Shown: positions 20,275 to 61,891 of the stretch, piece by piece
Layout of the letters: the number at the start of each line of letters is the position of its first letter
How positions within the stretch are numbered: the stretch's first letter is position 1
Assembly (NCBI GenBank): GCA_977017575.1
Contig: CDRNVI010000147.1
Location: forward strand, 1 to 64,000
Reading direction: 5' to 3'
Source: Paramoeba atlantica
Lineage: Eukaryota; Protista; Discosea
Length of the DNA stretch: 64,000 nucleotides
The notes under the pieces: model-generated
The model's database searches: none
The model's input: the letters and a program-made list of their open reading frames with translations, nothing else
Told to the model about the DNA's origin: nothing
Position numbers and translations under genes: made by a program

Positions 20275-21070
20275 GCAGGTAGGGCATGCAATGCCAATTC
20301 CGGGGATATTTTACCGAAAGGGGATGCTCTACACCGGTTGCTTACATCCCTAAATGTAACCCTCATGAGATCCCAAGCCCGCATGCTCGTCCTACGCCGG
20401 CCTGCTGTGGGTCCTGATTCAGCGCTCCTAGGCTATGGGAACGAGTAGTGGATCACTCGCCACACCCAAAGACTTCCTCGCCTGCGAAATCTGGCCGCTA
20501 TACAACGTTTTCCCGCGGCAAACGCCGACCCGGCTCTCGTTGTGTATGACCAGGGGTATGGCCAGGTGACTTTCGTGGGAAACTCCCGGTACGGATGCTG
20601 GTCGGGTCGACAGAGTCTATGCTCACGCCTAGTCCGTCAGGGCTAGGTACCCCAAGTGAGGTAGTACACGGGTAGTGAATCTCCTCCCCGTCGGCCAGCA
20701 TCCTGTTTCGTGACCGTGTCGTTGTCGACACAGGCCCGCGCCTGCGCCCTCCCGTATAGCAAGGGAAGGGTTCACAAGTCAGGCCGTGGAGAGGTCGAAA
20801 GACCCGGTCCGGAACGCGCGAATGGATTGGGTCTGGATTGCTTGTTTTAATTTTTACTGTGTCTTATTTGTCGTATATACTTAGGGGAGATTGAATTGCT
20901 AGTTTTGGGCTGAGAAAAAAGAAAAAGAAAAAAAAAAAAAGGTGAATTGCTAGTTTTGGGCTGAGAAAAAAAAGAAAAAGAAAATATGCTTCTGTGGAAA
21001 TAAAAAGAATTGCCAATTTGATTGCTTGTTTTAAATTCATATACCCAAAAAAAAAAAAAAAAAAAAAAAA
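20275..21070 (+). ncRNA. Putative structured non-coding retroposed segment ending in A-rich tracts and poly(A) (21047-21070); identity unknown
   Basis: Multiple stems: 20320-20350, 20593-20601/20695-20703, 20628-20647, GGTC-GAAA-GACC at 20793-20804. Region 20702-21046 is homologous to 54131-54391. No credible ORF. Confidence 0.4.
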
Positions 21071-21107
21071 TCTTTAACGATAAAGATACAGTTTCTGTAC
21101 CTTGTTG
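21069..21107 (+). other. Full 39-nt spliced-leader-like sequence heading a retrotransposon ORF
   Basis: The 3' half CAGTTTCTGTACCTTGTTG differs at 2/19 from the conserved kinetoplastid SL 3' half CAGTTTCTGTACTTTATTG. Followed by a 44-nt T-rich UTR and ATG 21152. The first two A's are shared with the upstream poly(A). Confidence 0.8.
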
Positions 21108-21151
21108 AATTTTTTCTATTTCATCTCTTTCCGAGGTACGGGTTAATTTTT

Positions 21152-22567
21152 ATGTCTGGTATCATCCCCCCCGCAGTCACACTTCCTCCCATAGACGACA
21201 ACAGCGGAAATCCGGACCACGAAGCCGAAGCCATGGAGACGGACGACAAATGCTTAGAAATTAATGGCAGAACTCACCGACCGGGGTCTTGGGACCAATT
21301 TAAAGGAAACGAACATTTAATCACGGGGACGAGCACATACCATGAAGACCTTTACACGACCCCCATCCCTCAGAATATTCCTGAAGATTGGATCCGCCGA
21401 ACGAACGCGATCGTAGGTGGGGTTAATGAAACACCGGACACAGGTCACACGGAGGTCGAAAATGAAGAGATGCAACACTCCGCTGTTATCAGGCAAGTAA
21501 CGCCAGCGAAGAAGACGAAAGAGGCTTTGAATGCTACACAGCATCTAAGTACACCACTCAAAACTGCTCTATCCGCCCAAGCACGTAGCAATGAGGACAT
21601 TAAAGGTCACTCCAAGAAAACCCCTACTCCACGGAGAAATAAGCTCATCCGATACCGGGTAGACCCAGAGACACCTTCACTCTTGCATCCTTATGAACTT
21701 ATTCCGGGCCCATCTCAAGAGCAACCAGGAAGAAGACACGAAACCCAGAATATTGAAAACGCTGGCGTTAGCCTCGCTGAGCCCAACTCATTGTCCCAAG
21801 GAAAGTCTGCCGCGCTCCGAGAGTGCCCGGCCCAGGGATGTTCATGGCGCAGTCCGTCGCATGGCGGATCCTGGCAAGCCTTCTATAACCATGTCGCATG
21901 CCGGCACGGTAACAGCATCCCTAATGAATGGTGGTACAGAGAAGGCCGTTTTCTATGCACCTCATGCGGACGCCACTACGACAACCACAAACGATCATCG
22001 CACACACACAGCTGCAAAGGAACGAAAACCGTCGCGCTCCTTTCTCCCGAACTTCTTACTCCACCCAACGAAGTGAGCACCGCACCAACACCAGAGAACA
22101 CCAACTTTGAGCTCCCACCTCTTCCTTCTGTCTGCTCTCTTCAGCTGAGTACGTGCAAAGACGTGCCTTATCGTTGCCGCCAGATCTGGGAAGAAATCCT
22201 CTCCTCCGCCATTCGGAACGCGGTCTCTGAAAACTCCTTAAAGGCATGGACGCTTCTGGCCATGCTTCCCAAATGCGTTTTACCAGCTCCGCATCGAGGG
22301 GGCCGCAAAGGCCACATGGCATATGCCTCACATGCGTATAAATGCATGCAGCGTTGGGCGGAACAAGAGTACTCGGACCTATGGAGCGAAGCAATTGTAG
22401 CCTGTCGAAAAAAGCAAAAATCTCCAACGGAATTCCCTGACGAAGACGAGAAGGCAGCGATTCGAGCAGAACTCCTCGTCCGCCACGGCGAGCTCTCTAG
22501 AGGGTTGGCCTCCCTAACGTCAGATCCAATGGCGCCTGACGATGACGAACATTTGAAAAATTGCTAG
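21152..22567 (+). CDS. N-terminal part of the CRE-like polyprotein (GSWDQF module, zinc fingers, pre-RT region)
   Basis: ORF track. It ends at a -1 frameshift near TTGAAAAATTG (~22553-22563), where the protein continues as LLEKHP in the next ORF. Confidence 0.8.
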   Translation: MSGIIPPAVTLPPIDDNSGNPDHEAEAMETDDKCLEINGRTHRPGSWDQFKGNEHLITGTSTYHEDLYTTPIPQNIPEDWIRRTNAIVGGVNETPDTGHTEVENEEMQHSAVIRQVTPAKKTKEALNATQHLSTPLKTALSAQARSNEDIKGHSKKTPTPRRNKLIRYRVDPETPSLLHPYELIPGPSQEQPGRRHETQNIENAGVSLAEPNSLSQGKSAALRECPAQGCSWRSPSHGGSWQAFYNHVACRHGNSIPNEWWYREGRFLCTSCGRHYDNHKRSSHTHSCKGTKTVALLSPELLTPPNEVSTAPTPENTNFELPPLPSVCSLQLSTCKDVPYRCRQIWEEILSSAIRNAVSENSLKAWTLLAMLPKCVLPAPHRGGRKGHMAYASHAYKCMQRWAEQEYSDLWSEAIVACRKKQKSPTEFPDEDEKAAIRAELLVRHGELSRGLASLTSDPMAPDDDEHLKNC

Positions 22568-25500
22568 AAAAACACCCCCGTCGTCTTCAAATTGACTCGT
22601 GCGAAAACTGCCCGCCCCCGAACTGCGCTCCACTGGAACTTGACGAACGCGAAGTTGCAAAGACGCTGAAGAGCTTCAACAGGGGTTCCTCTGCCGGCAC
22701 TATGGGATTACGCCCAGAGCACCTACAGGCAGCACTGCTCGTACACGGAAATGACTTTCTCCGATCCCTCACAAAGCTAACAAATCACCTCCTAGCTGGG
22801 AAGGCACCCTCTGAAGTACAGGCGCACTTCGCAGGGGCGCGCTTATGCGCCCTATCAAAGGGTGAAAATGATGTTCGTCCGATCGCTGCCGGTGAAACCC
22901 TTCGGCGATTAGCGAGCAAAGCCGTATGCAACGCAATCCGACCCAAAGCGAGCGAGCTCTTTGAAGGCAAACAGTACGGAGTGGCAGCTCCAGCCGGGGC
23001 CGAAAGAGTCATTCACATGTGTCGCCTGGCCATGTCGTCCAATATGGAAAACCCGAACTTCGTCATGTGCAAAGTGGACCTACGTAACGCTTTCAATAAC
23101 GTAAGCAGGGCTGCCTTCCTTCCACTAGTACAGGAATATTTCCCGGAACTCTTCCCTTGGATCAATTGGTGCTATTCCGACCCCAGCTCTCTTACCTACG
23201 GGGCCCGATTCATCTCCTCCGAGGAAGGAGTACAACAGGGCGATCCCCTAGGACCATTGCTCTTCTCGTTAGTGGCCCTGGAGCTCTCAGAAGCCATTAA
23301 CCTTCAAACTGATATTCCCGCCCAACTCTGGTATCTCGACGATGGCGTCCTCGTTGGCCAGGCGCAGGAAGTTAGAGACGCCCTAGACACGATCGCCCGA
23401 GTAGGACCTCAATGGGACTTGTATCTCAATACGTCGAAATGCGAAATTATTACTTCCCCCAGCTCGGCCCACCAGGCTGATTACTTCCCAGACATACCCG
23501 ACGAGAAGATCAATTCGCAGGGGAACTTTGACATACTAGGGAGTCCTGTAGGATCCGCCGACCACTGCTCTGCTTATCTTCTTTCTCACGCCCTAGAACC
23601 AGCCGAGGATACCCTCGATGCCATCACCAACATTCAGGACCCCCAGGTCGCGCTTGCCCTAATTCGTCAATGTGCAGGGTTCTGTCAAATGGTGTATGCC
23701 ATGAGAAGCACGCCCCCACAGTCCCTGATTCACCTTTGCTCCCGTTTAGACGACTTTCTCATGACCGCTATAGAGGCAATCATCTGTCCTCTGGACAGGT
23801 CAGCACAATCTCAAGCACAGCGACTGAAGCGTCATGGGGGATTAGGTCTGAGATCCGCAGCTCTCCACGCCTCCGCGGCTTACGTTGCATCCGTCGCCTT
23901 TGCCACAGATTCCTGGGATCCCACAGACGCTGAAGGTTTCTCGGAGGCCATCCTCGACATCAATCAGAAGGCCGGCACTGCTCTCCTCGATCCCCGAGGT
24001 CGTGTTCTCACAACTCCCAACGCCCCATGCGAGAAGGCCCTGAGCGCGCCGTACTCCTACCGGAAGAGAAGGCGCCCTCCGCCAGGGAATGATCCTCACC
24101 CCCCGGACGAGCCTCCGGGACATATTCTTCGTACGACTTCCCGCACGGCCAACACACCCACGGATGCCTACCCACTCTCGACTCCCCTCTACGGTTCTGA
24201 AGAATGCCAGGACATGTTACCCCCACAGTGGCCCAAAGGGAAGATCCCGCGCCAGCGGGTAATCAGTTATGCTATTGCAGCCCATGCCTTTTCCCAGGAA
24301 TATGAGACAACTGACGCACGAACCCGTGCAAGGTGGATCTCCCAGTGTGGCACGGGAGCGAGCAGCTGGGCCTTTGTGACTCCTTCGAAAGACCTTGGGC
24401 ACGCCTTTACCCCCACACAATTCCGAACTTTGGCCCGTTGGTGGTTAGGCGTGGACATCTACCATGAAGATAGCACGTGCCCCATGCCGAAATGCTCGCT
24501 CCCCCTTGACAGCAAAGGGGACCATGCACTGTCTTGCAAACATGGCCATGGTATTGTGACAAGACACAACGCTGTTACGGACCAGTTCGCGGACGTGTGC
24601 AGTCGAGCCCGCCTCGCCCCTCAACGAGAAAAGAGTCTCGGGAACAGGGGCCCAGGCGGGGCCCTCACCAGACCTGGCGACATATACTTGCCCAGCCTTT
24701 TTCTTGGAAATCCCATTGTGCTTGACTTCGCGGTCACCCATGCTCAGCAATTAAAATATACGGACAAAGTCCGAAACGCTAGCTGGGTTGCCGCGGGGTC
24801 ATTTGCCGAACATTATTCCTCAATGGAGAAGGGCAAGCAGCGTCGAGAAGCCGTAGAGGCAGGATGCGACTTTACGGCCATGGTTGTCGAAAGTTATGGC
24901 GCCTGGAGCCCCAGCGCTTCAGCCGTGCTCCGCAAAGTCGGTGAGAGGTGTTCGCACGCCTCGGGGGGTCTCAGAACGGAATCGCTTTATCCTACTGACT
25001 TAAAACCGGAAACAGTAATTAAGACACAGAGAGCTTCCTTAATAGGGCATCTTGTGCGCCATCCTACACCGTTTACTACAGCAGTACTATGGAGAACAAA
25101 TGATGAGGCCTCTAAACCAACATTGTCCGAACGGTGTGCCCACGAACTACACTCTGATGTTACTGAAATTCTACAACTTGGACAAGATCGCCCCACATGG
25201 CGGAAGAAACTGGAAAAACTACAGGTGGAGCTGGAACCACGGCCTTCTTACACAAAGTCTTGTTCTCCTGCTTGGGAAAAAAGTATTAAAAAGATATTGG
25301 AAAACAAGGGCTATCAAACTCTACAGTACGTGGAAGAAAGTAGCACCCCTTTTCCAATAAGCGACTCGGAAACACACTTATATACGGATGGGTCGCTCAT
25401 TCCGGGTACAAAGAAACAACTCCAAGGATGCGGCATAGTAATAATACGAAACAACGAACGTACATTATTCTACGGGACAAGACCTCCGGAAAAATTCTGT

Positions 25501-26343
25501 GATTCCATACAATCTATAGAGGCATATGCTGTTGTCGAGGCAATTTCTCTGGCTAGCAACTACGAGGGAGATGTAATACTTCACACGGATTCAGAGTACA
25601 TATGGGATTTCTTCCACGAAACTGTGCATCGGTATCGGCTCATTGGGTTCCACTCATTCAAAGGGTGCGAAGCAATGCGATCCCTTCAAAACGCTTACTA
25701 CAGTACAAAACATACTAAAAGATTCTACTGTATCAAGGTCAAATCACACAATGAAAATATGTACAACGATACGGCAGATTATTTAGCCAAAAAGGCGTGC
25801 AAGCTGGAAGGAAATGAACTAGCTATAAAATACTACGGGGATATATTGCACGGCAATGCAAAGAGGAAATCAGAGCAAAATAATACCTCAAGATGTCTTA
25901 AAACTCAGAGGACTAGAAAAGGCACAAACCAAAGAGCAGTACCTGTATCTACGGGGCCCCCTTTGTCGGAAAACTCAAACGATTCACGTTCAACGAAACA
26001 ACCCAAACGGAGCATTCGAATAAATGAAAAGAGGACGAAATCTCCCATACGCAAAGCTTCTTTACATAAGAAGACAAAGGGTATCAACTTAATTTCCAGC
26101 CCCCCACAGATAACCAATTCGAACGTAAGCATTGAGGTGAAACGAAATAAACCGCAAATGAAGCGTCTAAAAGATACAAGTTTGGACTTATCATCATCCC
26201 AGACAAAGAGTGAACCAGAAAAAGAAAAGGAGTCACAAAAGCGAGTGAAAAGGACATCAAAGAAAAAACCTTGTTTTACAGCTAAAGGAAAAGACAAGAG
26301 TATAATTGATGTAAAAAAGCATGGAAATAAGCGGGAGAATTAG
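22561..26343 (+). CDS. Chimeric ORF: CRE-like RT + REL (to ~24975) fused in frame to a LINE post-RT + RNase H fragment
   Basis: After the REL domain the sequence switches to LYPTDLKP...RASLIGHLVRH, then RNase H motifs LYTDGS, IEAYAV, HTDSEY, KVKSH, NDTADYLAK. Confidence 0.85.
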   Translation: MLEKHPRRLQIDSCENCPPPNCAPLELDEREVAKTLKSFNRGSSAGTMGLRPEHLQAALLVHGNDFLRSLTKLTNHLLAGKAPSEVQAHFAGARLCALSKGENDVRPIAAGETLRRLASKAVCNAIRPKASELFEGKQYGVAAPAGAERVIHMCRLAMSSNMENPNFVMCKVDLRNAFNNVSRAAFLPLVQEYFPELFPWINWCYSDPSSLTYGARFISSEEGVQQGDPLGPLLFSLVALELSEAINLQTDIPAQLWYLDDGVLVGQAQEVRDALDTIARVGPQWDLYLNTSKCEIITSPSSAHQADYFPDIPDEKINSQGNFDILGSPVGSADHCSAYLLSHALEPAEDTLDAITNIQDPQVALALIRQCAGFCQMVYAMRSTPPQSLIHLCSRLDDFLMTAIEAIICPLDRSAQSQAQRLKRHGGLGLRSAALHASAAYVASVAFATDSWDPTDAEGFSEAILDINQKAGTALLDPRGRVLTTPNAPCEKALSAPYSYRKRRRPPPGNDPHPPDEPPGHILRTTSRTANTPTDAYPLSTPLYGSEECQDMLPPQWPKGKIPRQRVISYAIAAHAFSQEYETTDARTRARWISQCGTGASSWAFVTPSKDLGHAFTPTQFRTLARWWLGVDIYHEDSTCPMPKCSLPLDSKGDHALSCKHGHGIVTRHNAVTDQFADVCSRARLAPQREKSLGNRGPGGALTRPGDIYLPSLFLGNPIVLDFAVTHAQQLKYTDKVRNASWVAAGSFAEHYSSMEKGKQRREAVEAGCDFTAMVVESYGAWSPSASAVLRKVGERCSHASGGLRTESLYPTDLKPETVIKTQRASLIGHLVRHPTPFTTAVLWRTNDEASKPTLSERCAHELHSDVTEILQLGQDRPTWRKKLEKLQVELEPRPSYTKSCSPAWEKSIKKILENKGYQTLQYVEESSTPFPISDSETHLYTDGSLIPGTKKQLQGCGIVIIRNNERTLFYGTRPPEKFCDSIQSIEAYAVVEAISLASNYEGDVILHTDSEYIWDFFHETVHRYRLIGFHSFKGCEAMRSLQNAYYSTKHTKRFYCIKVKSHNENMYNDTADYLAKKACKLEGNELAIKYYGDILHGNAKRKSEQNNTSRCLKTQRTRKGTNQRAVPVSTGPPLSENSNDSRSTKQPKRSIRINEKRTKSPIRKASLHKKTKGINLISSPPQITNSNVSIEVKRNKPQMKRLKDTSLDLSSSQTKSEPEKEKESQKRVKRTSKKKPCFTAKGKDKSIIDVKKHGNKREN
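24976..26343 (+). mobile_element. 5'-truncated RNase H-bearing LINE fragment (Ingi/L1Tc-like architecture inferred)
   Basis: Homologous to 29470-30622 and 62900-64000. No APE domain is present, so the clade is inferred. The left boundary is approximate. Confidence 0.7.
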
Positions 26344-26653
26344 CCTTACGACATTAACTTTCCGATTTGAGAGATGCTATTGGAGCCTATGCTTCTGTTA
26401 TATTTAAGTTAATTACCATCAGATTTGGTGAATTAAAGAATTACGTTCGCTGACGTGATTGCGGCGGTGAGTTGTCTTATAGTGTTCAAAAGCTAAGTAC
26501 TAATGGTTCATAGAGATCGATTGATTAGGAGGCTTGAAATTGAAAGTCTGTTTGTTTTTGAAAAATTTTCTGTAAGTGTGTTCTGTGTTGATATTTTGAG
26601 GGTGGAAATATTTAGGGGAAATTTTTGAATCCTTTAACTGGGCTAACATCTCA

Positions 26654-27223
26654 GTGTTGGTTGGTTGGTTGGTTGGGGCTCAAATACCGGAGCATCAGGC
26701 GCCCCCGGCTACACGCGAACAAGTATTGGAGGCGTGCGAATGGCTGCTTCCGGACGAAGCCGCGGGCCTGACCTTGGCGTGGAAGACATGCAGCAGAATA
26801 GACGATGTCAAACATCTGAGGAAATTAGATTTACAAGTGGTAGATCTCGAGCGGAGAATACTGGGAGTAACGTTTCCGACTCACAAAGGGGATCCCTTCA
26901 GAGTAGGGACTGCTATTCCAATGACTTGCAACTTGACGGAGTGGAAAATCTTCATGGACCAATTGGACAAGCTGAAGCCAGAAGACAAGTTCACGACTTT
27001 AACGACGCTGAGAGCCAATGCCGTGCTGAAGCGGGTGAAAGCAGAGTTGTCGGCACATTCTGTAAAAAGAGGGGCTCTAGTATCACTCCTCAGAAAGGGA
27101 GTTCCACTGTCGGTAATACAGCTGTTGGCCAAGCACAAAGATCTGGAGACATTGTGGATATATCCCCCTCGACTGGAAGTGGCCTTGTCCCTAGGGCTAC
27201 AGGACGCGACAAAATTACTGTGA
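26654..27223 (+). CDS. Tyrosine recombinase catalytic domain of a YR retrotransposon
   Basis: Motifs in the expected order: SRIDD (R), AHSVKRG (HxxR), LAKHK (H), LWIY (Y). N-terminus probably missing. Confidence 0.8.
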   Translation: MLVGWLVGAQIPEHQAPPATREQVLEACEWLLPDEAAGLTLAWKTCSRIDDVKHLRKLDLQVVDLERRILGVTFPTHKGDPFRVGTAIPMTCNLTEWKIFMDQLDKLKPEDKFTTLTTLRANAVLKRVKAELSAHSVKRGALVSLLRKGVPLSVIQLLAKHKDLETLWIYPPRLEVALSLGLQDATKLL

Positions 27224-50143: not shown

Positions 50144-53100
50144 ATTTCTGTACCTTGTTGTTGTTTTTTTATATATTTAATCGCTATGACACGCCTTGCT
50201 CGCGTAGATTCTCAGACGTCGAAAGGCTTAGGTGTGAAAACTGGTCGATCGAAAGTGAAATCAAGCGTACCAGAAAAGAAATACCAAAAGAACAAGGAGA
50301 AAAAGCACGTAGTCAATGACTTTTCGGGCGACAAATTTGGCGAGACCATTCCCCCCACCCCGACAAAGACGAGAATACCACGAATAAGAATCATCGGAAC
50401 AACTACTACCCCCACCCCGACAAAACCGAAGAAAACGCCACGAATCAGAATCATCGGAGGAGAGCCACTTTCAAAGATTTGGGCAGACCACGGGACTGAC
50501 CAGGCTACTCACCACCTGCGAAACGAGACCTCCGAAGAACCGACTGATAGGGGTGAAGTTGCCACTGGCGAACTACACGAATCTCATAAAAAAGATCTGC
50601 GTGACGAATGTGACGGGATGTCGTTAGACAGCGAGTGCGAAGCAGAGCGAGAGATGGCGACACGGAGCAGCAGCTCAAAGTCAGCAGACCATGTACACAA
50701 CGTTGTGTCTAAGTGGGGAAAAGGGACGGAATGTGTAATCGAATGGGGATTCCGACAGAATGCCGCAACATACACTTCAAAAGGTATCGTTGTCGGTCGA
50801 TCTGCTCGAAAAGGAAATGTGAAAATCAAGATATCCTACGAACCTGCTCCAGGGAACGAAGGCCCAAATGGTTTCCTTTATCTTCCTCAGTCCAACAAAA
50901 TCAAAATCTATAGTCTTCGAGCCACCAAACTGCTTAAAGTTGAGACGACAATAAGAAACTTGGAGGAACAGGCGGACAACATTTCTAGTGAAGATGGTCA
51001 AAGCGACCTCGAACCTCTTCCACCCATGGCGCAAATCGATCCATCCTTCTCAGTCCATGTCGTGGCTATCTTCCGCGCAATCATTCGAGGCTATTCCGCC
51101 GTGAAACTCGACTCTGAAAAAGCAGCAATATGGCATAAATTCCTGAACGCACCCCGAGATTCGCTGGCTACAGTTCGTCAAATGTCTCGACGGAAACAAA
51201 GTATAGGACACACACGCAAGACAGAGGAACTATCAACAGAATGCAATCTCAGTGCAGATGAACGCGAAGAACTGCAGGTCGACAGACGCTCGATAAGAAA
51301 CGCATTGACGACCGCCCGAGCTTCGAATCTGGGGAAAGCCACCCGCATCATTGACAACGTATATAGGGACTCTGTGCTTACAGCCGACGAAAAAGTTCAG
51401 AAATTGAAGGAGCTACATCCTGAGGGCCATGCCATTCAAATCCCGGAAACCGATTTTCCACGCATTGGCATAGTAGAGAAATCGGAACTTCGGCTAGCCG
51501 TCGACAAGTTAGCTCGGGGAGCTTCACCAGGACCAAGCGGGCTCAGCGAGAGTATGATGCGTTTACTTGGGGACGACGATGAATCAAGCCTCTCATTGTG
51601 CCACATGATTCGGGACGTTATCAACGGTGAAATTCCGCTATGTGTTCGGAAACGTCTCACTCGATGTCGAATAATTGCCCTTCCGAAGCCACAGAATGGG
51701 ATACGTCCAGTTGCCATGGGAGACACCATCCTTAAAATTTGTGGGTCTATACTACTTCAGCGACATGAATCTTCATTAAAAGCTTTCTTTGCGCCAATCC
51801 AACGAGGAGTGTTGTGTAAGAATGCCTGCGAATCAATCATTCATGAGTTGCTACAAGAATACGAAGATGGACATGCGTTGCTCGCGGTCGATTTCAGCAA
51901 CGCCTACAATACGCCACGGCGCGATACCATTGCACAGGCCCTGACGGAAAACTCCATATTCAAACCTTTCATGCGATTGTTCTATTTGGAATATGGGCTT
52001 CCGTCAGAGTTACTCTTTTTCGCGCACAACTCTCTTTTCGCAACCATTGAAAGCACATCTGGTATTCGTCAGGGCTCCGCTCTATCTTCCATGTATTTTT
52101 GCGCACTTTTACAAGCCCCACTTCGAGAAGTCGCAAGTCTATACCCTGATGTCAAAATTCGGGCATACCAAGATGACGTGACCCTGAGTTCAAAAAATGT
52201 GCAATCGCTCGAGGCAGCTTTCCTCCATTTACGCGAAATCACTGGAGAGCTCAATCTGCATGTTAAGTTTCAAAAGTGCGAATGGTTCCAGAAAGATACT
52301 CCACGAACCGATGTACCCTTGCCGCTGGAACAACTAGGTGTCAACTTCCGTACCGATGCAATAAAAATTCTTGGAGCTTACATCGGCGCAGATGAAGTTG
52401 TAGAGAATCTTCTCCTGCAGAAAATGGAAAAACACAAATGCCTCTTTCGTCGCCTTTTGCTCATGGGTCCAAGTAACCTATCTCTCGCCATTCTGCGAAG
52501 ATGCACAATCCCGCGACAAGATTACCATTTGCGAGTCCATCGACCAAATGCCACCCTCCGGCTTGCACAATCTTTTGAAACACAGGTTCATAGAGTTTTA
52601 CAAAAATGGTGCGGTGCCGACGAAAATGCACTCAAACTCGCAGCACTTCCTCAAAAACTTGGTGGATTAGGTCTGATTTCTTCCACTCTGAAGCAGAAAT
52701 TTTGTTTTGAATCTGCCCGAACATCTATCGAAGAGCAATTTAAACCCATTTACGCTCCGGTAGATATTACAGGCGGAGTCAAGGCAATAGAAAAAGCTCA
52801 GAGCCGCGGAGAACTCTCGCAAAGGCTACTCAAAAAGAAAATAAGCAATGAACATGAAAAACAACTGGCAGAACTGCAGAAAAACACTGAGATTGAACAC
52901 ATCTTGAAGCGCACGAAGGAATCCAATTTTCATCTGGAAAGCACGAGTAACTATGTCAATCCCTACCTCTTTCGCTACACACTCAAGATGCGCTTGGGCA
53001 TCAGCCTGTCAAAAACACCTGCAAAGATTACATGCCCGGGTTGCTGCAGTCAAGAATCTCCTTCCAACATTATTCCTCACGTCGCAGGCTGTTCCCGTTG

Positions 53101-54095
53101 CTCTGGGATGAATTGTACGCGGAAACATTCCCACATTGTCCGCTATCTTGCAGAATTATGCTCCAAAGCAGGCCTGCCTTCCGTCATTGAACCGCGTATT
53201 CATTCATCATACTATTGTACCAAATGCAAATGCACCATCTCCGCGGAAGTGTCAGAACAACACCCGTGTAAAGCTCGACGAATACGTTCCGGCCCAGATA
53301 TTGCCATTATGTGGCCTCACATGGGCGAGGTCCTATACGATTTCACGGTCGTCCACACTTGCTGCACGAGCTACGTCAAACAGACCAGCAACGCTCTCTT
53401 ACAACAAGCAATCGACCGAAAGATCAAGAAATATGTCACTGAAAAAGGCGTTGATAGCGATTCTTTTCGATGTTTGGCCACTACAGACTGTGGCCTTCTG
53501 CACAGCGATACAAAAGCCCTTTTGAAAGCACTCGCTCACCGTGCCCAAGCGAATTATGAAAATGTACGTCATGCTCTTCAACTTGAAATCGAGAAGATGG
53601 GGGCATATACCGTAGTATCTCAACTGCGTGAATATATTCCGAAAGAAAACTGGATAGGAGGACTTCGGTTTTAGACACCCCAGAAGCCCAACTCAAATTT
53701 TTTATTATGGATATTCATATTGTTGTTGTTGGATATTCATATTATTTTCATTAATTATTATTTTCATTAATAGATCTTGTGAAGGTAATCGAAGCGTACA
53801 CGTAAAAAAACATAAAAGTATACGGATTGAAATTCAGGAGGGATTATATTTGAATAGGGATTCTGAACACTAGGAAATAAATGATGCTAAACCTGACTGA
53901 CACATGATGATGGTGAATTATCCAAACAAGTCATGGCTAGGCTTCGTCGCGCCAGACTCGTAAAAACATTGCTATCGTTATCCTTGTACGAGTTCTGTAA
54001 GTGAGGTTTGATTATGATTTCTTTTCTATATATGATTTACTATGTGTCCGGGCATTTTTATACAGGTTTTATTTTGTGTGACGTGTGTGCGGGCA

Positions 54096-54129
<34 letters not shown>

Positions 54130-54496
54130 TCCTGTTTCGCGACCGTGTCGCTGTCGACACAGGCCCGCGCCTGCGCCCTCCCATATAACAAGGGAAGGGT
54201 CCACAAGTCAGGCCGTGGTGAGGTCGAAAGACCCGGTCCGGAACGCGCGGATGGATTGGGCGTGGATTGCTTCCTTTTTTATTATTATTGTTATCAGAAT
54301 CATAAATAACTTAAGGCAGGTTGAATTACTAGTTTTGGGCTACAACATGTGAAATTGCTAATTTGATTGCTTGTTTACAAATCATATACCCCCCCCAATG
54401 GACCTTCATGGTTCATGTATTGGGTAATATAGAGGCAATGCCGCGTTTCATACTTCTCCCCCCTTATTAATCGCAAAAAAAAAAAAAAAAAAAAAA
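50144..54496 (+). mobile_element. Complete CRE-like retrotransposon insertion: truncated SL, ORF, 3' UTR, poly(A), transduced segment, poly(A)
   Basis: TSD ATATTGTATTGT at 50132-50143 and 54496-54507; SL remnant 50145-50160; A28 at 54099-54126; A22 at 54475-54496. Confidence 0.9.
50186..53674 (+). CDS. Intact CRE-like RT + REL polyprotein (1162 aa from the ATG after the SL remnant)
   Basis: VDFSNAYN, IRQGSALSS, AYQDDV; CPGCC...HVAGC, RKHSH, IEPR, SGPDI, YDFTVVH. The ORF-track start at 50102 runs through the flank and the SL. Confidence 0.9.
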   Translation: MTRLARVDSQTSKGLGVKTGRSKVKSSVPEKKYQKNKEKKHVVNDFSGDKFGETIPPTPTKTRIPRIRIIGTTTTPTPTKPKKTPRIRIIGGEPLSKIWADHGTDQATHHLRNETSEEPTDRGEVATGELHESHKKDLRDECDGMSLDSECEAEREMATRSSSSKSADHVHNVVSKWGKGTECVIEWGFRQNAATYTSKGIVVGRSARKGNVKIKISYEPAPGNEGPNGFLYLPQSNKIKIYSLRATKLLKVETTIRNLEEQADNISSEDGQSDLEPLPPMAQIDPSFSVHVVAIFRAIIRGYSAVKLDSEKAAIWHKFLNAPRDSLATVRQMSRRKQSIGHTRKTEELSTECNLSADEREELQVDRRSIRNALTTARASNLGKATRIIDNVYRDSVLTADEKVQKLKELHPEGHAIQIPETDFPRIGIVEKSELRLAVDKLARGASPGPSGLSESMMRLLGDDDESSLSLCHMIRDVINGEIPLCVRKRLTRCRIIALPKPQNGIRPVAMGDTILKICGSILLQRHESSLKAFFAPIQRGVLCKNACESIIHELLQEYEDGHALLAVDFSNAYNTPRRDTIAQALTENSIFKPFMRLFYLEYGLPSELLFFAHNSLFATIESTSGIRQGSALSSMYFCALLQAPLREVASLYPDVKIRAYQDDVTLSSKNVQSLEAAFLHLREITGELNLHVKFQKCEWFQKDTPRTDVPLPLEQLGVNFRTDAIKILGAYIGADEVVENLLLQKMEKHKCLFRRLLLMGPSNLSLAILRRCTIPRQDYHLRVHRPNATLRLAQSFETQVHRVLQKWCGADENALKLAALPQKLGGLGLISSTLKQKFCFESARTSIEEQFKPIYAPVDITGGVKAIEKAQSRGELSQRLLKKKISNEHEKQLAELQKNTEIEHILKRTKESNFHLESTSNYVNPYLFRYTLKMRLGISLSKTPAKITCPGCCSQESPSNIIPHVAGCSRCSGMNCTRKHSHIVRYLAELCSKAGLPSVIEPRIHSSYYCTKCKCTISAEVSEQHPCKARRIRSGPDIAIMWPHMGEVLYDFTVVHTCCTSYVKQTSNALLQQAIDRKIKKYVTEKGVDSDSFRCLATTDCGLLHSDTKALLKALAHRAQANYENVRHALQLEIEKMGAYTVVSQLREYIPKENWIGGLRF

Positions 54497-54543
54497 TATT
54501 GTATTGTTTGCTGCAACGAAACCTGAATTAAAAATCATGCTTA

Positions 54544-57151
54544 CTGTACCTTGTTGATTCATTTTAATTTTCTATTTTTCTACGCTTATGACACGCCTTT
54601 CTCGTACGTCTTCTCGTTTAGATTCCGAAAACACGCGGAAAAAGGGCAGCAGAACAACAGTGAACAACGGGAAGTCTCACGGGAGAGTTGAAAAACAACG
54701 TACTCAACGAGATCAAAGCAAGACGAACGGAATAAAGGTAGCAGAAGAATCAGGATCGCACACGGAGACACCAGTGAAGGTGAAGAAGACTCCAAAGATC
54801 AAGATAATAGGTTCCAAAACACTAGCCCCGAATTGGGCGGACCATGAGCCTCCGTGTGAAATCACATCGCGGAATCTAATCAAAATCAAAGCCAAGAACT
54901 TCCGCATCGGATCTACGAGTCAATCACACGAGAACATAGCCCATGACGAAAACCATATCCAAGAGGACCCAGCCAAAGAAATGTCCGAAACAGAAAGCGA
55001 GACCAGTGATACAATGTGTCTGGACGACGATGGATCGACGCAAGATCGAGTACAGGAGCTAATGACACAGGCCGGCAACAAATCGCCCGACCAAGTGTAC
55101 AACATCGTTTCCAAGTGGGGCAAGGGTACAGAATGTGTGATCGAATGGGGCTTCCGACAGAACACTACAAACTACAAGTCAAACGGCATCGTTGTAGGCA
55201 GGACCGTGCGAAAATCAACCGTGAAAGTCAAGATTTCATACGAGCCGGCTCTAGGTCACGATGGTCCATGCGGTTTTCTTTATCTTCCACCGTCCAATAA
55301 AATCAGAATCTGTAACCTCCAAGCCACTAAGTTATTCAAAATCGAGATGCCGACACAAAATTTGGAGGAACAAGCGGAGCACATCTCATGCGAAGACGGT
55401 CAGAGTGACCTTGATCCGCTCCCGCCTATGGCTCAAATAGGCCCATCTTTCGCGGTTCATGTTGTGGCGATTTTCCGTGCGATAATTCGGGGATATGCAG
55501 CGGCGGAGCTTGACTCAGAAAAAGAGGCGATATGGCACAAATTTTTGAATGCGCCTCGCGATTCACTTGCGACAGTACGTCAAGCAATTCGACGAAACCA
55601 AAAAGTAGCTCATGTTCGCAACGACCGAGAAAACTTGGAAGCTAGCAACTTGAGTGCGGAACAACGGGCGGAGTTAGAAATTGACAGGCGTTCGATCAGG
55701 CACGCCCTACAGACGGCGCGGGCAGGAAACCTTGGCAAAGCAACTCGGATCCTGGACAATGTCTACAAGGAATCAGCTCTCACTCCTGAAGAAAAAGTGC
55801 GAAAGCTTCAACAACTTCATCCTGAAGGCGACGCCATACGAATCCCGGAAGCAGACTTCCCACGGACTGGCGTTGTTGAGAAATCAGAGGTTCGCCTAGC
55901 GACCGAAAAATTATCCAGAGGCGCTTCACCAGGACCAACCGGCCTGAGTGAAAGCATGATGCGACTGCTCGTAGACGACGAAGAGTCATGTCTTTCACTT
56001 TGCCACATGCTTCGGGATGTCATCAACGGCGAAGTTCCTCTGAATGTGCGAAAACGTCTAACCCGATGCAGAATCATCGCGCTAGCGAAACCTCAAAATG
56101 GAATTCGACCTATTGCGATGGGGGATACCATTCTGAAGATTTGCGGTTCCATCCTTCTACAACGACATGAAAACGCTCTGCAAAATTTTTTCTCCCCAAT
56201 TCAACGAGGCATTTTGCAAAAAAACGCATGTGAGTCCATCGTTCACGAACTTTTAAATGAATACGAAGAAGGACATGCTCTCCTCACCGTCGATTTTAGC
56301 AACGCGTATAATACACCACAACGCAACGCCATTGCTGAGGCACTCCTTGGTAATCCCATTTTCAAGCCTTTCATGCGCCTATTCTACCTAGAATATGGGA
56401 TTCCCTCTGAGCTGCTATTTTTTGCGCACAATGCTCTGTTTGCTACCATCGAAAGCTCTTCAGGAATTCGCCAAGGATCGGAACTTTCATCAATGTACTT
56501 CTGCGCACTTTTGCAAGGCCCGCTACGAGAACTCATGCACCTCTATCCTGACGTGAAGATCCGAGCATACCAAGACGATGTGACTTTGAGCTCCAAAAAC
56601 GTGCAAGCATTGGAGGCAGCTTTCTTTTACCTGCGTGAGATCGCCGCAGAGATGAACCTCCGAATTAATTTCCAGAAATGCGATTGGTTTCAGAAGAACA
56701 TTCCCAACATAGCTCAGCCTCCTCCGTTGGAAAAACTTGGAGTAAACTTTTGCAGTGATGCGATAAAAGTCTTAGGCGCATACGTAGGTACAGACCAAGT
56801 CGTGGAAAATCTGCTGATCAAGAAAATGGAGAAACACAAGTGCCTATTCCGCAGGTTGTTGCTTATGGGTCCCAGTAATTTGTCTCTTGCCATTCTCCGC
56901 CGTTGTACGATTCCACGGCACGATTACCATCTACGAGTACATCGGCCAGGCGCTACTTTCCAACTAGCACAATCCTTCGAGAACCAAGTAAACAAAGTTC
57001 TAGAAAAGTGGAGTGGAGCAGACGCAAACGCCCTGAAACTCGCCGCTCTACCACAGAAACTCGGTGGCCTAGGCTTAATTTCCTCGACTCTGAAGCAGAA
57101 ACATTTCTTCGAAACTGCCAGCAAATCTATATCGGAAGACGGTCAGAGGAG
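54544..57151 (+). mobile_element. SL-headed CRE-like element, 3'-truncated after RT (no REL); ATG at 54588
   Basis: SL remnant CTGTACCTTGTTG at 54544-54556. RT motifs RQGSELSS and AYQDDV. Homology stops at KHFFETASK, where the next SL remnant begins. Confidence 0.87.
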
Positions 57152-60100
57152 GTTTCTGTACCTTGTTGCCTTGTTGAATTTTTACTACTTTGCTTTTCTT
57201 TCTTTTATGTCAGAACCTCCCCCGAGGGCGGCGCAAGGCACGCCGTCGCATCAGCAGCAGAACACTGCAGCAGTGAGGTCCACTGGCGTAAAGGAGCACA
57301 ACTTGAACTTTACGGAACAAGCGAATAGACACGAGATTGGATCATGGGACCAGTTTGAGGCAAACAAGAAACTCATCCAAGACGCTAGCACGTACGACGA
57401 CCTCATGTACACAACCCCCATTCCACAGCATATTCCCCTCAACTGGCAAAAGAAGATGGAACACAAAGCGCAAAGCATCGAGAAAAACCCAACGTCAGAC
57501 CACGGCCGCCACAACACGAAAGACGAGGAAACCGCTTTTGCCAGTGTTCGGAGAAATGAAATTCTACGAAGAAGTCAAACTGGAGAGTCATCCTTGAAAA
57601 TTAAGATCAGAAAAGAGACACGACTGAAGAAAACTCCGAAAAAGGTAAAAGTGATACTCCGTAGCTCTGATCTAACGAAGGCGAACCTCGGACAAGCGGA
57701 CATGTCACATGACGAAGGATCGGAGAGCTCATCTGCATCAGGATCAGACATCTCGGAGGACGATCGGGTGGCCGAGGTCGCCGAAGAAACAATGAAAGCT
57801 CCGGACCAAATACTAAAGATAATCAACGACTGGGGAAAAGGAACTACTTGCGAGCTACATTGGAAATTCCGCCACAGCAGTGAGATTTATCAGTCGATTG
57901 GAGAAGTTGTTACGCGACATTCTAGAAAAGGTGCAATCAGGGTAAAGATTTCCTACACACCGCAGCATCAGCCAGGTCCATCAGGATTTCTATATCTACC
58001 TGCATCTCACAAGATTAACATCTTCCGATTACGGGTGGTAAAGCTCAACCGTATTGTGACACAAACGCCATTTTTGGATATCGAAGAAACACAAGATTGT
58101 GACACGGGATGCGACTTGGAGCCTCTTCCCCCACTCGCCCACATCGACCCCACGTTTGCCGCTCACGTCATAGCAATCTTTAGATCAATCCTGCGAGGAT
58201 ATCCCACGCTCAAGCTTATAACAGAGAAAACATCCGTCTGGCACAAGTTTCTAAACGCACCCCGCGACTCACTCACCACTGTGCGACAAGCGATCCAGCG
58301 GAAGTATCATGTGCCAAACAAATTGCGCAACGAGGAGCCGGCGTTCTCCTCACCTGACGAGAAACTTGAACGTGAAGTCGACCGCCGATCAATCCGCAGT
58401 GCGCTTCGAACGGCTAGGGCTGGTAACCTAAGCAAAGCTACGCGTATCCTCGACAACGTATATTTTGACTCGAACCTTAGCGTTGAGGAGAAAGTAGCGG
58501 AGCTCAAGAGTCTACATCCCGATGGAGAGCGCCCACAAGCTCAGACGGACGCAGACCCCCGAACAGGAATCATCGAAAAACACGAACTTCGGGCCGCGAT
58601 AGAGAAACTGGCTCCGGGAGCTTCCCCGGGCCCTACGGGATTGAGTGAAGCCATGTTGCGCCTACTTGCGGATGACGAGGAATCCAGCACCGCGCTCTGC
58701 CATATGTTACGCGATGTAGTGAACGGGGAGATCGCATCGTCGGTGCGTGACAGACTGACACGATGTCGACTAATGGCCATCAACAAACCGCAGAACGGAA
58801 TACGACCGATTGCAATTGGGGAGACTCTATTGAAAGTATGTGGCTCGATCCTTCTAAACAGGAACGAAGAGAAACTGAAGAAATTTTTCCAGCCTGTCCA
58901 AAGAGGGATCCTCCAAAAGAATGCGTGCGAGGGAATTGTTCACGAGGTGCTCGATGAATATGACAAGGGACACGCCATCTTGGCGATCGATTATAAGAAT
59001 GCCTACAATACCCCCACGCGTCAAGCAATCTTCGAAGCACTCAAGAAAGACGGCATCTTCAAACCTTTCATGCGGATTTTTAATCTTGAGTACGGGGACT
59101 CGTCTGATCTGCTCTTCTTTGCCAATAACTCGCTCCATTCGATCGTGAAGAGCACTTCTGGCGTTCGACAGGGCTCAGCGCTTTCGTCACTATACTTCTG
59201 TGCCCTGATACAGGATTCGCTCAAAGAAATCGAAGAGTCCTTTCCAGATGTAACGGTTCGAGCGTACATGGACGACATAACCTTGTCATCAACAAATCCC
59301 CTATCCTTGCAGACCGCCTTTCTACACCTGCACGAATCTTCACGACTTCTGGGACTGGAAATGAACTTCCAGAAATGCGAATGGTTCAAGAAAACAGACA
59401 CTCCATGGACGCCCCAAACTCTGCAAGCGATGGGGGTAGCCTGCCCGCAAGAAACAGTGAAAATTCTAGGTGCATATATCGGACAGGACGAGATGGTAAG
59501 TGAATGCCTAAAGAAAAAGATGGACAAACACAAGTGTCTCTTTCGCCGTCTTCGACTCATGGGACCGAGCAACCTATCCCTCGCAATTCTGAATCGGTGC
59601 GCCATCCCCCGTCAAGACTATCACCTCCGAGTACACAAGCCCGAAGCATCCCTTGAAATCGCCCAGCAGTTCGACGCGGAAGTAGGCAGTATTATTCAGC
59701 ATTGGTTTAATGCAACGGGCCCTACTGCAAAACTCGCCACACTTCCGCAATATCTCGGCGGACTCGGACTTACTCCGTCATGTTTGAAGCAAAAGCACTT
59801 TTTCCAAGCGTCTCGCAAAGCCATTGAAGAGCAATCCAAAACCAATAACGCTCCGGTGGTCATAGCGGGATCCAAGCGAAACAGGGCTCTGAACGAACGT
59901 GACAGCCAGAAGAATGATACTTCCAAGCGATTAGTCATGAAAGCAATACGATCTGAACAAAAACGATTTGCAACCGAGCTGAGAAAGGACATGCGCCTCA
60001 AAGAACTAATGGAGCGAGGATCCGCAACATTTCACCACCTGCAATCAACCAGCAACTACATCAATCCGTACCTCTTCCGTTTCTGTATAATGATGCGCCT

Positions 60101-60779
60101 GGGAATAGTGCCAGAAAATATGCCTAAGAGTGTGGTATGCCCGGGATGCCTGACAGAATATTCTTCTGATACCATCTTCCAGCACATTCCTGGATGTACA
60201 CAATGCTGTGGGATAAATGCAACGAAGAAGCACACACGATTAGTCCGTTTCCTAGGTGAATTGTGTGCCAAAGCAGGGGTGCCCCATGTTATAGAACCTC
60301 GAGTACATTCATCATTCTTCTGCACCAAATGTAAGGCCACCATATCCGAAGAGCTCTCTGAACATCACCCATGCAGAGCAAGACGTATGCGATCAGGCCC
60401 TGATCTCGGTATCATGTGGTCCCATCTCGGAGAAATTCTCTACGATGTCACCGTAGTTCACAGTTGTGCCCCGAGCTATGCCAAAACCTCCGTCGAGCAG
60501 TTAATCCAAAATGCCCTTGAGCGCAAGCACAAAAAATACGTTGTACAAGGGGGCATACCGAAAGAAAGTTTCAGCTGCTTGGCAATGACCGAATTAGGAC
60601 AGTTGCACAACAACACGAAAACTCTCATTGTCTCGCTCGCACAACGGTCACAACAAAACGTGAAGGATGTCAAAGAAGCGTTCCAACTTGAAATAGAGAA
60701 GATGAACGCGTACACAATTGCCACGCAACTCCGACAATACTTTCCACCGATTCAGTGGCTCGGAGGACTTGAACACTAA
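57152..60779 (+). mobile_element. SL-headed CRE-like element with intact ORF 57207-60779 (RT + CCHC + REL)
   Basis: SL remnant 57152-57168 plus extra CCTTGTTG. IDYKNAYN, VRQGSALSS, AYMDDI; CPGC...HIPGC, SGPDL, YDVTVVH. The 3' end and TSD were not found. Confidence 0.88.
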
Positions 60780-61017
60780 TCTGAATTTCCTTTCACTTAC
60801 AACCTCTATTCGATTTGATAAAATTCCCCGTCATCTACGTTGATATCATCTCATGATCTAAGTTGATATTAACTTATTTCAGATAAAGAGCTCACGGAGA
60901 GTATTGCTGCTGTTAATGTCTGTACTTTTCTCAATATGCTTTACAATAGGAGGAACCAAGGAGTGAATTTTGTTTGTTTGGAGTGAATTTTGCTTGTTTT
61001 AATAGTTTACTCATTAT

Positions 61018-61891
61018 TCATTCTTTATATTCTTGGTAGGTGTTCTTTATAAAAAGTGTGTTCTTTATAAAAAGTGTGTTCTTAAGCTTGTGAATTTTAT
61101 TAAGCAAAGAATGTAAAGTCACTGGAGGCAGTAGTTTTGTTCGCTCCCGCCCACCTCCCCACGCCGTGTGCCGGCGAACACCCACTCGTAAGTCAGGAAG
61201 TACTGCCGGGCCATCTCCTAAAGGTCCTCGCCGGTGTTCTCGGTACGTGGCAGCCTCGAGAAGAGAAATGAAACTTCTGAGAATAGCGTCAGGATCCTGC
61301 TGATTGTTGTTGTTATTGTTCATGATGAAAAGCAGAACTGAGTAAAAAGGAAGCGCTGAGACTTTTATCTGCTTTGATGGTGGTGGTTTAAGTTTTCTCT
61401 CGTGTTTTGACCCCGAGTGTGGGCTAGATTTGATTCGAATAGCTTCTTGTGTCTGACTTGAATTGGGAGAAGCTCTGGGTCGCAGCTGCATTCCGTTTGA
61501 AAGCTTCTTTATGACTGGAGGTTCCTGCGTTTTAGAGGCTGTCACACTGGAATACTTGTCCTCTTCGTCTCGATGCTTATCGTGTCCTTGATCCGGCGTT
61601 GTGTCTACACCTATCTCTTCCACGACGCGTGTTAGTTTCTCGTTCCACTCTTTCGATGTGTGTGCGGGTATGCCTGTTGTATAAAGCAAATCGTTGTATG
61701 TACTTGGCTTGTTGTTCGTGAGTTTTTCGTTAGCGGCAAATTGGTTCCATGATCCGAGTTCATGCCTGTTAGCTTCTCTGGTGAAATCAACATTCTGGTC
61801 TTCGTAGTCGCGTTCTCTGCAGGTGAATTGACGCGTGAACATTCGGTTTTTGAATAGAATAGATATAATGAAATCAACAAGGTACAGAAAC
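61018..61891 (-). pseudogene. SL-headed 5' fragment of a CRE-like element (ATG 61842), joined to unrelated sequence
   Basis: SL remnant at 61875-61891. NRHELGSWNQF...STYNDLLYTTGIP matches the 57207 and 21152 N-termini. No RT. Confidence 0.75.

What the first reader, a model, noticed from the sequence alone, without database searches (positions are those of the whole stretch)
21069..61891. CRE-like retrotransposons that integrate as spliced-leader-capped mRNAs
Seen: every retroelement 5' end in the window starts with the same SL-like sequence: 39 nt at 21069, 16 nt at 50145, 13 nt at 54544, 17 nt at 57152 and 17 nt at 61891 on the minus strand. All end exactly at ...CCTTGTTG and are followed by a 25-44-nt T-rich UTR and the ATG; none is followed by a GT-initiated SL intron. 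Known: kinetoplastid and diplonemid SLs are 39 nt with a conserved CAGTTTCTGTAC..TTG 3' half; SLACS, CZAR and CRE1/2 insert site-specifically into SL RNA genes; dinoflagellates recycle SL-bearing cDNAs. Inference: here the SL is part of the transposition intermediate rather than the target, so these CRE-clade elements would be dispersed, promoter-less and dependent on host trans-splicing. I do not know of this combination being described.
Basis: partly seen in the sequence, partly recalled or inferred. Interest (0 to 1): 0.9.

Follow-up and report, generated by a model that had tools for sequence, protein, structure and literature searches.

The report
Retrotransposons headed by the spliced leader
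In this kinetoplastid-type protist, jumping genes of several kinds begin with a DNA copy of the short leader the cell splices onto its messenger RNAs. They were therefore copied back into the genome from finished, leader-carrying mRNA, not by landing in leader genes as their known trypanosome relatives do.

Summary
Two more full copies lie on the minus strand at 12387-12422 and 16556-16591.

- **The true SL.** The genome (45.7 Mb) holds about 40 real SL RNA genes in SL-5S rRNA arrays on other contigs. There the exon is followed by a GTATGAG intron.
- **The element copies.** The genome also holds 359 dispersed SL copies. In those examined the exon stops exactly at its 3' end and runs into element-specific 5' UTRs. 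I counted 49 UTR clusters among 142 junction sites.
- **Not the target.** The window has no SL intron and no duplicated SL half. An insertion with an empty sister site shows that the SL remnant belongs to the insert.
- **RNA template.** The two cap-proximal bases are miscopied and vary within families. This fits an RNA template carrying the cap.
- **The elements.** They are young R2/CRE-type elements (RT plus restriction-like endonuclease), plus a tyrosine-recombinase-type element.

Best reading: retrotransposition from trans-spliced mRNA, with frequent template switching by the reverse transcriptase.

Tandem SL relics mostly do not follow an AG, so dinoflagellate-style re-splicing explains only a minority.

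The scan has already reported this on other contigs of this genome. I found no published description.

The parts
21047..21071 (+). A-run (24 A) plus A-T. This is the junction in front of the SL copy. The A-run is the tail of a stacked 3' fragment of another element.
21072..21107 (+). SL copy, 36 nt, identical to SL RNA gene exon positions C3-G38
21108..26678 (+). Element 1 body. 44-nt T-rich UTR; ORF1 21152-22567 with an LsmAD-like N-terminus; ORF2 22561-26343 with RT, CCHC/restriction-like endonuclease and RNase H; 3' UTR ending in a (TTGG)n run at about 26655-26678. Twelve copies in the genome are 98-100% identical over the first 393 nt.
50133..50144 (+). Left target-site duplication (ATATTGTATTGT) of the composite insertion 50145-54496
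50145..50160 (+). SL remnant, 16 nt (5'-truncated copy), followed by an extra TTG
50161..54126 (+). R2/CRE-type single-ORF element. UTR 25 nt; ORF 50186-53674 with RT, then CCHC and PD..D..K endonuclease; poly(A) at 54099-54126. It is 98.9% identical over 3.7 kb to a copy on contig C9 that has the full SL.
54127..54496 (+). 348-nt 3' fragment of another family plus A22, inside the same target-site duplication. This is a chimeric, template-switch type insertion.
54497..54508 (+). Right target-site duplication (TATTGTATTGT after the A-run)
54544..54556 (+). SL remnant, 13 nt
54557..57151 (+). Element A, a paralogue of the 50145 element (65% aa identity). It covers only aa 1-850 of about 1163, so it is 3'-truncated and abuts element B.
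57152..57176 (+). SL remnant of 17 nt (57152-57168) plus a tandem 8-nt relic CCTTGTTG (57169-57176)
57177..61030 (+). Element B. ORF 57207-60779 (1191 aa) with an LsmAD-like N-terminus, RT and endonuclease. The 3' end is approximate.
61875..61891 (-). SL remnant, 17 nt, preceded by GTTG
61036..61874 (-). Short element. UTR 32 nt; ORF from 61842 with the LsmAD-like domain; 18-nt tail repeats at 61036-61088.
12387..12422 (-). Full SL copy (C3-G38, one T>C change) inside a 1303-bp element with inverted terminal repeats (11845-13147). Upstream sequence is fixed (...GTACAAT).
16556..16591 (-). Identical second copy, inside the 16014-17316 insert. It is a segmental duplicate of the first.

Best explanation
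**What it is.** The SL sequences are DNA copies of the 5' ends of mature, trans-spliced element mRNAs.

**Steps.**
1. Shown for the host's genes: SL RNA genes lie in SL-5S arrays, with the exon followed by a GTATGAG intron.
2. Inferred from kinetoplastid biology: element transcripts made by read-through RNA polymerase II (Pol II) transcription receive this exon by trans-splicing, like any mRNA.
3. Shown by anatomy: the element's R2/CRE-type reverse transcriptase (RT) and endonuclease copy that mRNA into a nicked target by target-primed reverse transcription. A cDNA that reaches the RNA's 5' end writes the SL into DNA, and one that stops early leaves a 5'-truncated SL of 13-17 nt. The insert is flanked by a target-site duplication.
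4. Inferred: the RT stumbles on the two cap-proximal bases and often switches template. It switches within the SL at short homologies and onto poly(A) tails of other RNAs. This gives stacks of A-run-joined fragments, chimeras and SL stutters or relics.

The SL is cargo of the intermediate, not the integration target.
For: **Gene versus copy.**
- About 40 genes have the SL followed by GTATGAGAAGC, in arrays with 5S rRNA.
- A metagenome SL gene has the same exon.
- 359 dispersed copies match with at most 2 mismatches, and the reversed-pattern control gives 0.
- In all 58 distinct sites read in full, the exon ends exactly at G38 and joins an element UTR or a short SL relic, except one copy of the SINE-like family (L033) where GTAC follows.
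- There are 49 UTR clusters among 142 junction sites, covering at least three element types.

**Not a target.**
- No SL intron in the window, and no SL 5' half apart from the three full copies.
- An 11-12-bp target-site duplication flanks the 50145 composite.
- An insertion in an SL-5S spacer on contig C74 starts with 7 nt of SL. Its empty site is preserved in the neighbouring array unit.

**Graded 5' truncation.** In a position-ordered sample of one junction type, 38 of 56 copies keep at least 35 nt, 9 keep 32-34 nt and 9 keep 28 nt or fewer.

**Cap-proximal signature.**
- All 17 intact array genes among the 25 loci inspected read A-A-C; the other 8 are two variant copies and six retropseudogenes.
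- At 71 full-length sites outside the recombinase family, the copies read A-T-C at 36, A-A-C at 21 and something else at 14.
- These states are mixed inside single families and subfamilies.
- Retropseudogenes of the SL RNA itself, intron included, also differ from the gene only at their first few bases; four of six begin at C3.

**Template switching.**
- SL 8-22 is joined to SL 4-38 at TTT, and SL 2-12 to SL 1-38 at AA.
- 57 of 71 sites have an A-run within 30 nt upstream.
- Mosaics of A-run-joined fragments occur.

**Enzymes and youth.**
- RT, CCHC/PD..D..K endonuclease and RNase H are present, with weak matches to solved R2 structures.
- Copies are 98-100% identical.
Against: - There is no RNA evidence. 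The one possible RNA run holds next to none of element 1's words.
- Daughter copies have ...TTG, not AG, in front of the UTR. How they regain an exact SL-UTR junction in the next cycle is unexplained.
- Some families end in (TTGG)n or have no A-tail, so 'polyadenylated mRNA' does not hold for all of them.
- The T at position +2 could come from an SL gene variant that I did not see.
- Loci L001-L094 were chosen by an A-A-T-C pattern, which inflates the A-T-C count.
Confidence: 0.85

Rival explanations
1. SLACS/CZAR/CRE-type site-specific insertion. The elements integrate into SL RNA genes, and the SL next to them is interrupted target sequence.
For: The elements have the same enzyme layout as that clade. 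One family member sits inside an SL-5S array.
Against: - That insertion is in the spacer, not the exon, and its SL remnant is absent from the empty site.
- The window has no SL intron and no downstream SL half.
- Upstream flanks are A-runs or unrelated DNA.
- All 17 intact array gene copies inspected have an uninterrupted exon.
Confidence: 0.02
2. The SL was captured once (or a few times) and is now a DNA-encoded 5' module. It would be passed on through full-length transcripts that start at its first base, for example from an internal initiator, as the Pr77 5' promoter does for L1Tc/ingi elements.
For: - Daughter copies lack a splice acceptor at the SL-UTR junction.
- Many unrelated families share AATTATTT right after the SL.
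- The recombinase-type family has a fixed upstream sequence before its SL.
Against: - 49 UTR clusters, from element classes with different replication modes, all join at exactly G38.
- SL positions 3-38 stay gene-identical while the UTRs diverge.
- The two cap-proximal bases differ between near-identical copies of one subfamily. Inheritance through DNA would not produce this.
Confidence: 0.08
3. The SL is added at the cDNA stage. The RT reaches the 5' end of an SL-less or 5'-shortened element RNA and jumps onto the 3' end of a free SL exon (a trans-splicing intermediate) or onto another SL-bearing RNA.
For: - Tandem relics have preferred lengths of 10, 7 and 16 nt, in many families.
- 16 of 74 have 1-9 extra bases at the joint, as at RT template jumps.
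- Multi-layer partial SLs occur without any full SL (L104).
- Within-SL switches at microhomologies are seen.
Against: - Trans-splicing of all Pol II mRNAs is the established default in kinetoplastids and explains the plain junctions by itself.
- Free SL exon is a rare species.
- UTR starts are constant within families, as expected for a fixed splice acceptor.
Confidence: 0.05

Closest known systems
SLACS (Trypanosoma brucei), CZAR (T. cruzi), CRE1/CRE2 (Crithidia): SL-gene-specific non-LTR retrotransposons
   Same: Same host lineage type. RT followed by a C-terminal zinc-knuckle and restriction-like endonuclease. Intimate link with the SL.
   Different: Those elements insert between nt 11 and 12 of SL RNA gene exons and stay in SL arrays (my own knowledge). 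Here the SL's 3' end is fused to the element UTR, the copies are dispersed, and SL genes are intact. Clade membership by phylogeny was not tested.
Dinoflagellate retrogenes with DinoSL relics (PMC5585692, PMC6050394, PMC8045281)
   Same: A DNA-encoded spliced leader at the 5' end marks copies made from trans-spliced mRNA. Tandem relic leaders occur.
   Different: There the cargo is host genes, and relics are cut at the leader's own AG by re-splicing. Here the cargo is the retrotransposons themselves. Only 11 of 74 relics (the 16- and 22-nt forms) follow an AG.
L1Tc/ingi elements with the Pr77 internal promoter (PMC1874656, PMC8190864)
   Same: Non-LTR retrotransposons of kinetoplastids, which face a genome without gene-specific Pol II promoters.
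   Different: Pr77 gives unspliced transcripts that start at the element's first base. Here the first bases are the host SL. The Pr77 hallmark was not searched for.
R2 retrotransposon reverse transcriptase (solved structures 8gh6, 9nl3)
   Same: Best, though weak, match among solved structures for ORF2 of element 1. The chimeras, extra bases at joints and end-to-end joins seen here match the template jumping known for R2 RT (my own knowledge).
   Different: R2 is specific for 28S rDNA and is processed from a co-transcript by a ribozyme. These elements are dispersed and carry a trans-spliced leader. Element 1 adds an RNase H domain.

Membership tests
CRE clade (CRE1/2, SLACS, CZAR) | RT followed by a C-terminal CCHC motif and a PD-(D/E)xK restriction-like endonuclease | tested here: met
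   Motifs were read in the translations. In an 11-sequence alignment C950, C953, H965, D1052 and K1079 are invariant and C969 nearly so. Pfam RVT_1 hits. No Pfam model hit the endonuclease itself.
CRE clade (CRE1/2, SLACS, CZAR) | Site-specific insertion into the SL RNA gene exon, with SL gene sequence on both flanks | tested here: not met
   No SL intron or second SL half in the window. Flanks are A-runs or unrelated DNA. The array insertion lies in the spacer.
CRE clade (CRE1/2, SLACS, CZAR) | RT groups with CRE/SLACS/CZAR in a phylogeny | not testable with these tools
   Two protein searches and one atlas search returned no named reference sequences.
Non-LTR retrotransposons that use target-primed reverse transcription (R2-like) | Target-site duplication, variable 5' truncation, and a 3' tail (poly(A) or simple repeat) | tested here: met
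   An 11-12-bp duplication at 50133/54497, and poly(A) of 28 and 22. A duplication of about 16-22 bp with an empty site on C74. SL remnants range from 38 down to 7 nt.
Dinoflagellate-type SL recycling | DNA-encoded SL at the 5' end of a copy made from mRNA | tested here: met
Dinoflagellate-type SL recycling | Relic leaders truncated at the leader's internal AG through renewed trans-splicing | tested here: not met
   Of 74 tandem relics, 27 are 10 nt (after TG), 15 are 7 nt (after AC) and 4 are 8 nt (after TA). Only 9 (16 nt) and 2 (22 nt) follow AG.
Kinetoplastid SL RNA gene (for the reference exon) | Tandem gene with exon, GTATGAG 5' splice site, short intron, T-run end and linkage to 5S rRNA | tested here: met
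   Arrays on C97 and C107 with a period of about 2560 bp, and 5S rRNA at 99 bits in each unit.

The most novel reading that the evidence does not exclude
The DNA-encoded SL may be a working part of a self-sustaining cycle, not just a fossil. A template-switching, R2-like RT would use SL homology (other SL-bearing mRNAs, SL RNA or free SL exon) to heal and complete 5' ends. That would explain why about two thirds of copies are full length and why relics have fixed lengths. In the same reading, the systematic A-to-T reading at SL position +2 would record an undescribed base modification in this organism's cap structure.
Probability: 0.18. Interest if true: 0.8.

Novelty: new variant of a known kind. 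Interest (0 to 1): 0.6.

Why it matters
- **A third solution to the promoter problem.** Kinetoplastid genomes lack gene-specific Pol II promoters. Retrotransposons are known to cope by parasitising SL genes (SLACS/CRE) or by carrying an internal promoter (Pr77). Here they simply ride the host's trans-splicing.
- **A built-in tag.** The encoded SL marks RNA-derived copies and shows exactly where their RNAs are spliced. It also records what a cellular RT does at a hypermodified cap and how often it switches templates.
- **An open question.** How do daughter copies that lack an acceptor re-enter the cycle?
- **Possible use.** R2-type enzymes with relaxed target choice and strong template switching are of interest for RT biochemistry.

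Tried and rejected
**RNA evidence**
No RNA test was possible.
- The look-up of sequencing runs gave only contig-level runs, with one doubtful RNA run lacking the element.
- No exact gene for ORF1 is on record.
- Distant homologues on metagenome contigs carry no SL motif.
- A metagenome scan for the SL-UTR junction found nothing. The SL alone found one SL RNA gene.

**Phylogeny against SLACS/CZAR/CRE**
- No named references were retrievable.
- Only weak R2 hits among solved structures for ORF2, and none for the 50186 ORF.

- Leading N characters are trimmed from patterns.

**Ideas rejected**
- SLACS-type targeting.
- Re-splicing at the SL's internal AG as the main source of relics.
- The SL+GTAC family as SL RNA genes. 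It is a roughly 580-nt dispersed element.
- A target-site duplication for the A+B pair at 54544-61030 was not found, nor a clear one for the C9 copy.
Full report
**Observation.** The five sites are in the sequence as described. Each ends at ...CCTTGTTG, is followed by a T-rich stretch of 25-44 nt and then an ATG, and none continues with GT.
- A 14-mer from the 3' end of the motif hits 7 times with up to 2 mismatches, against 0.59 expected from shuffles.
- The two extra hits are full-length copies on the minus strand, at 12387-12422 and 16556-16591. They lie in two 100% identical 1303-bp inserts in the 18-bp satellite.
- The 57152 site carries a further 8-nt CCTTGTTG right behind the 17-nt remnant.

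**Is this the organism's spliced leader?** The genome (45.7 Mb, 248 contigs) has about 40 places where the motif is followed by GTATGAGAAGC.
- Most lie in tandem arrays on contigs C97 and C107, with a period of about 2560 bp. Each unit also holds a 5S rRNA gene at 99 bits. This is the usual layout of euglenozoan SL RNA genes.
- In all 17 intact array copies I read, the exon is the 38-mer whose first bases are A-A-C and whose last 36 bases equal window 21072-21107.
- An environmental contig carries an SL RNA gene with the same exon.
- I could not show the exon on host mRNAs.

**What carries the motif elsewhere?** The 39-mer, with up to 2 mismatches, occurs 359 times across the contigs. A reversed-pattern control gives none.
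- In the loci I fetched, the exon always stops at its last base and continues into an element 5' UTR and ORF. I counted 142 distinct junction sites falling into 49 UTR clusters.
- The elements are of several kinds:
  - **Single-ORF elements** with RT followed by a CCHC and PD..D..K endonuclease (50186-53674, 57207-60779).
  - **A two-ORF element** whose ORF2 has RT, the same endonuclease motifs and an RNase H domain (21152-26343). Solved R2 proteins are its best, weak, structural relatives.
  - **An element with inverted terminal repeats**, of the tyrosine-recombinase type described by earlier notes of this scan, in which the SL is internal after a fixed sequence.
  - **A roughly 580-nt SINE-like family** that starts near SL position 11.
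- The copies are young. Element 1 has twelve copies that are 98-100% identical over its first 393 nt. The 50145 element is 98.9% identical over 3.7 kb to a copy on C9 that has the complete SL.

**Target or cargo?**
- The window contains no SL intron. It contains no SL 5' half apart from the three full copies.
- The composite at 50145-54496 is flanked by an 11-12-bp direct repeat (50133-50144 and 54497-54508).
- On C74 a 4.7-kb element lies in the spacer of an SL-5S array. The neighbouring unit preserves the empty site, the insert is flanked by a duplication of about 16-22 bp, and it begins with 7 nt of the SL 3' end followed by its UTR. The SL remnant is therefore part of what was inserted.
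- In a position-ordered sample of one junction type, 38 of 56 copies keep at least 35 nt of SL, 9 keep 32-34 and 9 keep 28 or fewer. This is the graded 5' truncation expected from reverse transcription that starts at the 3' end.

**A mark of the capped RNA template.**
- From C3 to G38 the copies equal the gene. The two bases before C3 do not.
- Among 71 full-length sites outside the recombinase family they read A-T in 36, A-A in 21 and nine other pairs in 14.
- The A-T count is inflated, because many loci were found with an A-A-T-C pattern. In the unbiased sample both states are still common.
- A-T also occurs where the upstream DNA is not an A-run (L070, L076, L090, L091), so it is templated, not flank.
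- Both states occur inside single subfamilies with near-identical UTRs.
- Retropseudogenes of the SL RNA itself, intron included, also differ from the gene only at their first few bases; four of six begin at C3.
- From what is known of the hypermethylated cap 4 of kinetoplastid SLs, I infer that the RT misreads or stalls at the cap-proximal bases anew at each event. An unseen SL gene variant reading A-T-C is the alternative.

**Template switching.**
- 57 of 71 full-length sites have an A-run of at least 8 within 30 nt upstream. These A-runs are the tails of 3' fragments of other elements stacked in the same orientation.
- The 50145 composite has one target-site duplication around two units: a full element plus a 348-nt 3' fragment of another family.
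- Element A (54557-57151) lacks its last 310 codons and abuts complete element B. The two happen to be in frame, giving the 2063-codon ORF.
- At the SL itself there are stutters joined at short homologies: SL 8-22 to SL 4-38 at TTT, and SL 2-12 to SL 1-38 at AA.
- I read these as serial template switches of an R2-like RT. Repeated insertion into A-tails cannot be excluded for the stacks.

**Tandem relics.** 74 places have an SL 3' part repeated behind an SL copy.
- 27 are 10 nt, 15 are 7 nt, 9 are 16 nt, 4 are 8 nt, 2 are 22 nt and 1 is 9 nt.
- 16 have 1-9 extra bases at the joint.
- They occur in many unrelated families, and some have two or three layers.
- Only the 16- and 22-nt forms follow an AG in the SL, so re-splicing of DNA-encoded leaders, as in dinoflagellates, can explain only a minority.
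- The commonest form shares a TG at the joint, and the extra bases resemble RT jump products. The acceptor template is unknown. I leave this unexplained.

**What is not shown.**
- There is no RNA evidence of any kind.
- How copies that now have ...TTG instead of an AG in front of the UTR regain an exact junction is open.
- 'Promoter-less' is inference.
- Some families end in (TTGG)n or have no A-tail.
- CRE-clade membership could not be tested, for lack of reference sequences. The clade's defining site specificity is not met.

**Comparison and novelty.**
- *Known relatives in trypanosomatids.* They either insert into SL genes or carry the Pr77 promoter, which gives unspliced RNAs (PMC1874656, PMC8190864).
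- *Dinoflagellates.* Leaders encoded in DNA are known there for host retrogenes (PMC5585692, PMC6050394, PMC8045281).
- *No published description found.* Full-text searches found no description of SL-headed retrotransposons in Euglenozoa. The searches included the SL sequence itself, the Diplonema genome paper and a kinetoplastid intron study.
- *Within this scan.* The same phenomenon has already been reported on other contigs of this genome.
- *Verdict.* I rate it a new variant of a known kind. A specialist could have predicted it from universal trans-splicing. It is undocumented, clear-cut and informative about RT behaviour at the cap.

Noticed in passing
window 1-20274; L049 and L053; window 61036-61088: The 18-bp satellite (unit AGTGGTCTTAATACAAAA, about 1100 copies) resembles the 18-nt repeats that form the 3' tails of SL RNA retropseudogenes and of the short minus-strand element. 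These satellites may be RT-made tail repeats.
   Followed up: partly
window 29866-46927: A 748-bp tandem array of about 22 units, 99.5% identical. Its unit carries an RNase H-coding fragment of a retroelement (ORF 29408-30622). The tandem repeat tool missed it because its period limit is 500.
   Followed up: partly
window 48444-49794 and 29152-29416: A 177/359-bp tandem array, with a 265-bp piece of the same repeat next to the 748-bp array.
   Followed up: no
L049-L054 (C6, C11, C24, C83, C87): Retropseudogenes of the unspliced SL RNA, exon plus intron. Four of the six run to ...GGGGCTT. They are then followed by an A-run or 18-nt repeats. They place the SL RNA 3' end and show the same loss of the first bases.
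   Followed up: partly
L031-L042 and 172 genome hits: A roughly 580-nt dispersed SINE-like family. It starts at SL position 11-14, continues with GTACATTTT and a GC-rich hairpin, and ends in ...CATCAAAA. Its start coincides with the SLACS/CRE insertion point (nt 11/12) in the SL.
   Followed up: partly
window 21152-22567, 57207-57600, 61842-61540 (minus strand): A shared N-terminal domain (GSWxQF...NE...STY...LYTT.IP) with weak Pfam LsmAD matches. It is found in ORF1 of element 1, in element B and in the short element (E 1e-14 to 2e-22 between them).
   Followed up: partly
L162 (C21:1-5200) and C22:137-156 kb: A 2277-bp mosaic of at least six retro-fragments, joined at A-runs and headed by an SL copy. 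It has been amplified as a DNA tandem array.
   Followed up: partly
window 54588-60779: The 2063-codon ORF is a chance in-frame fusion of 3'-truncated element A with complete element B. It is not one gene.
   Followed up: yes
L165 (metagenome contig Ga0316204_10168667): An SL RNA gene with an exon identical to this organism's, in an environmental assembly. A close relative therefore occurs in nature.
   Followed up: no
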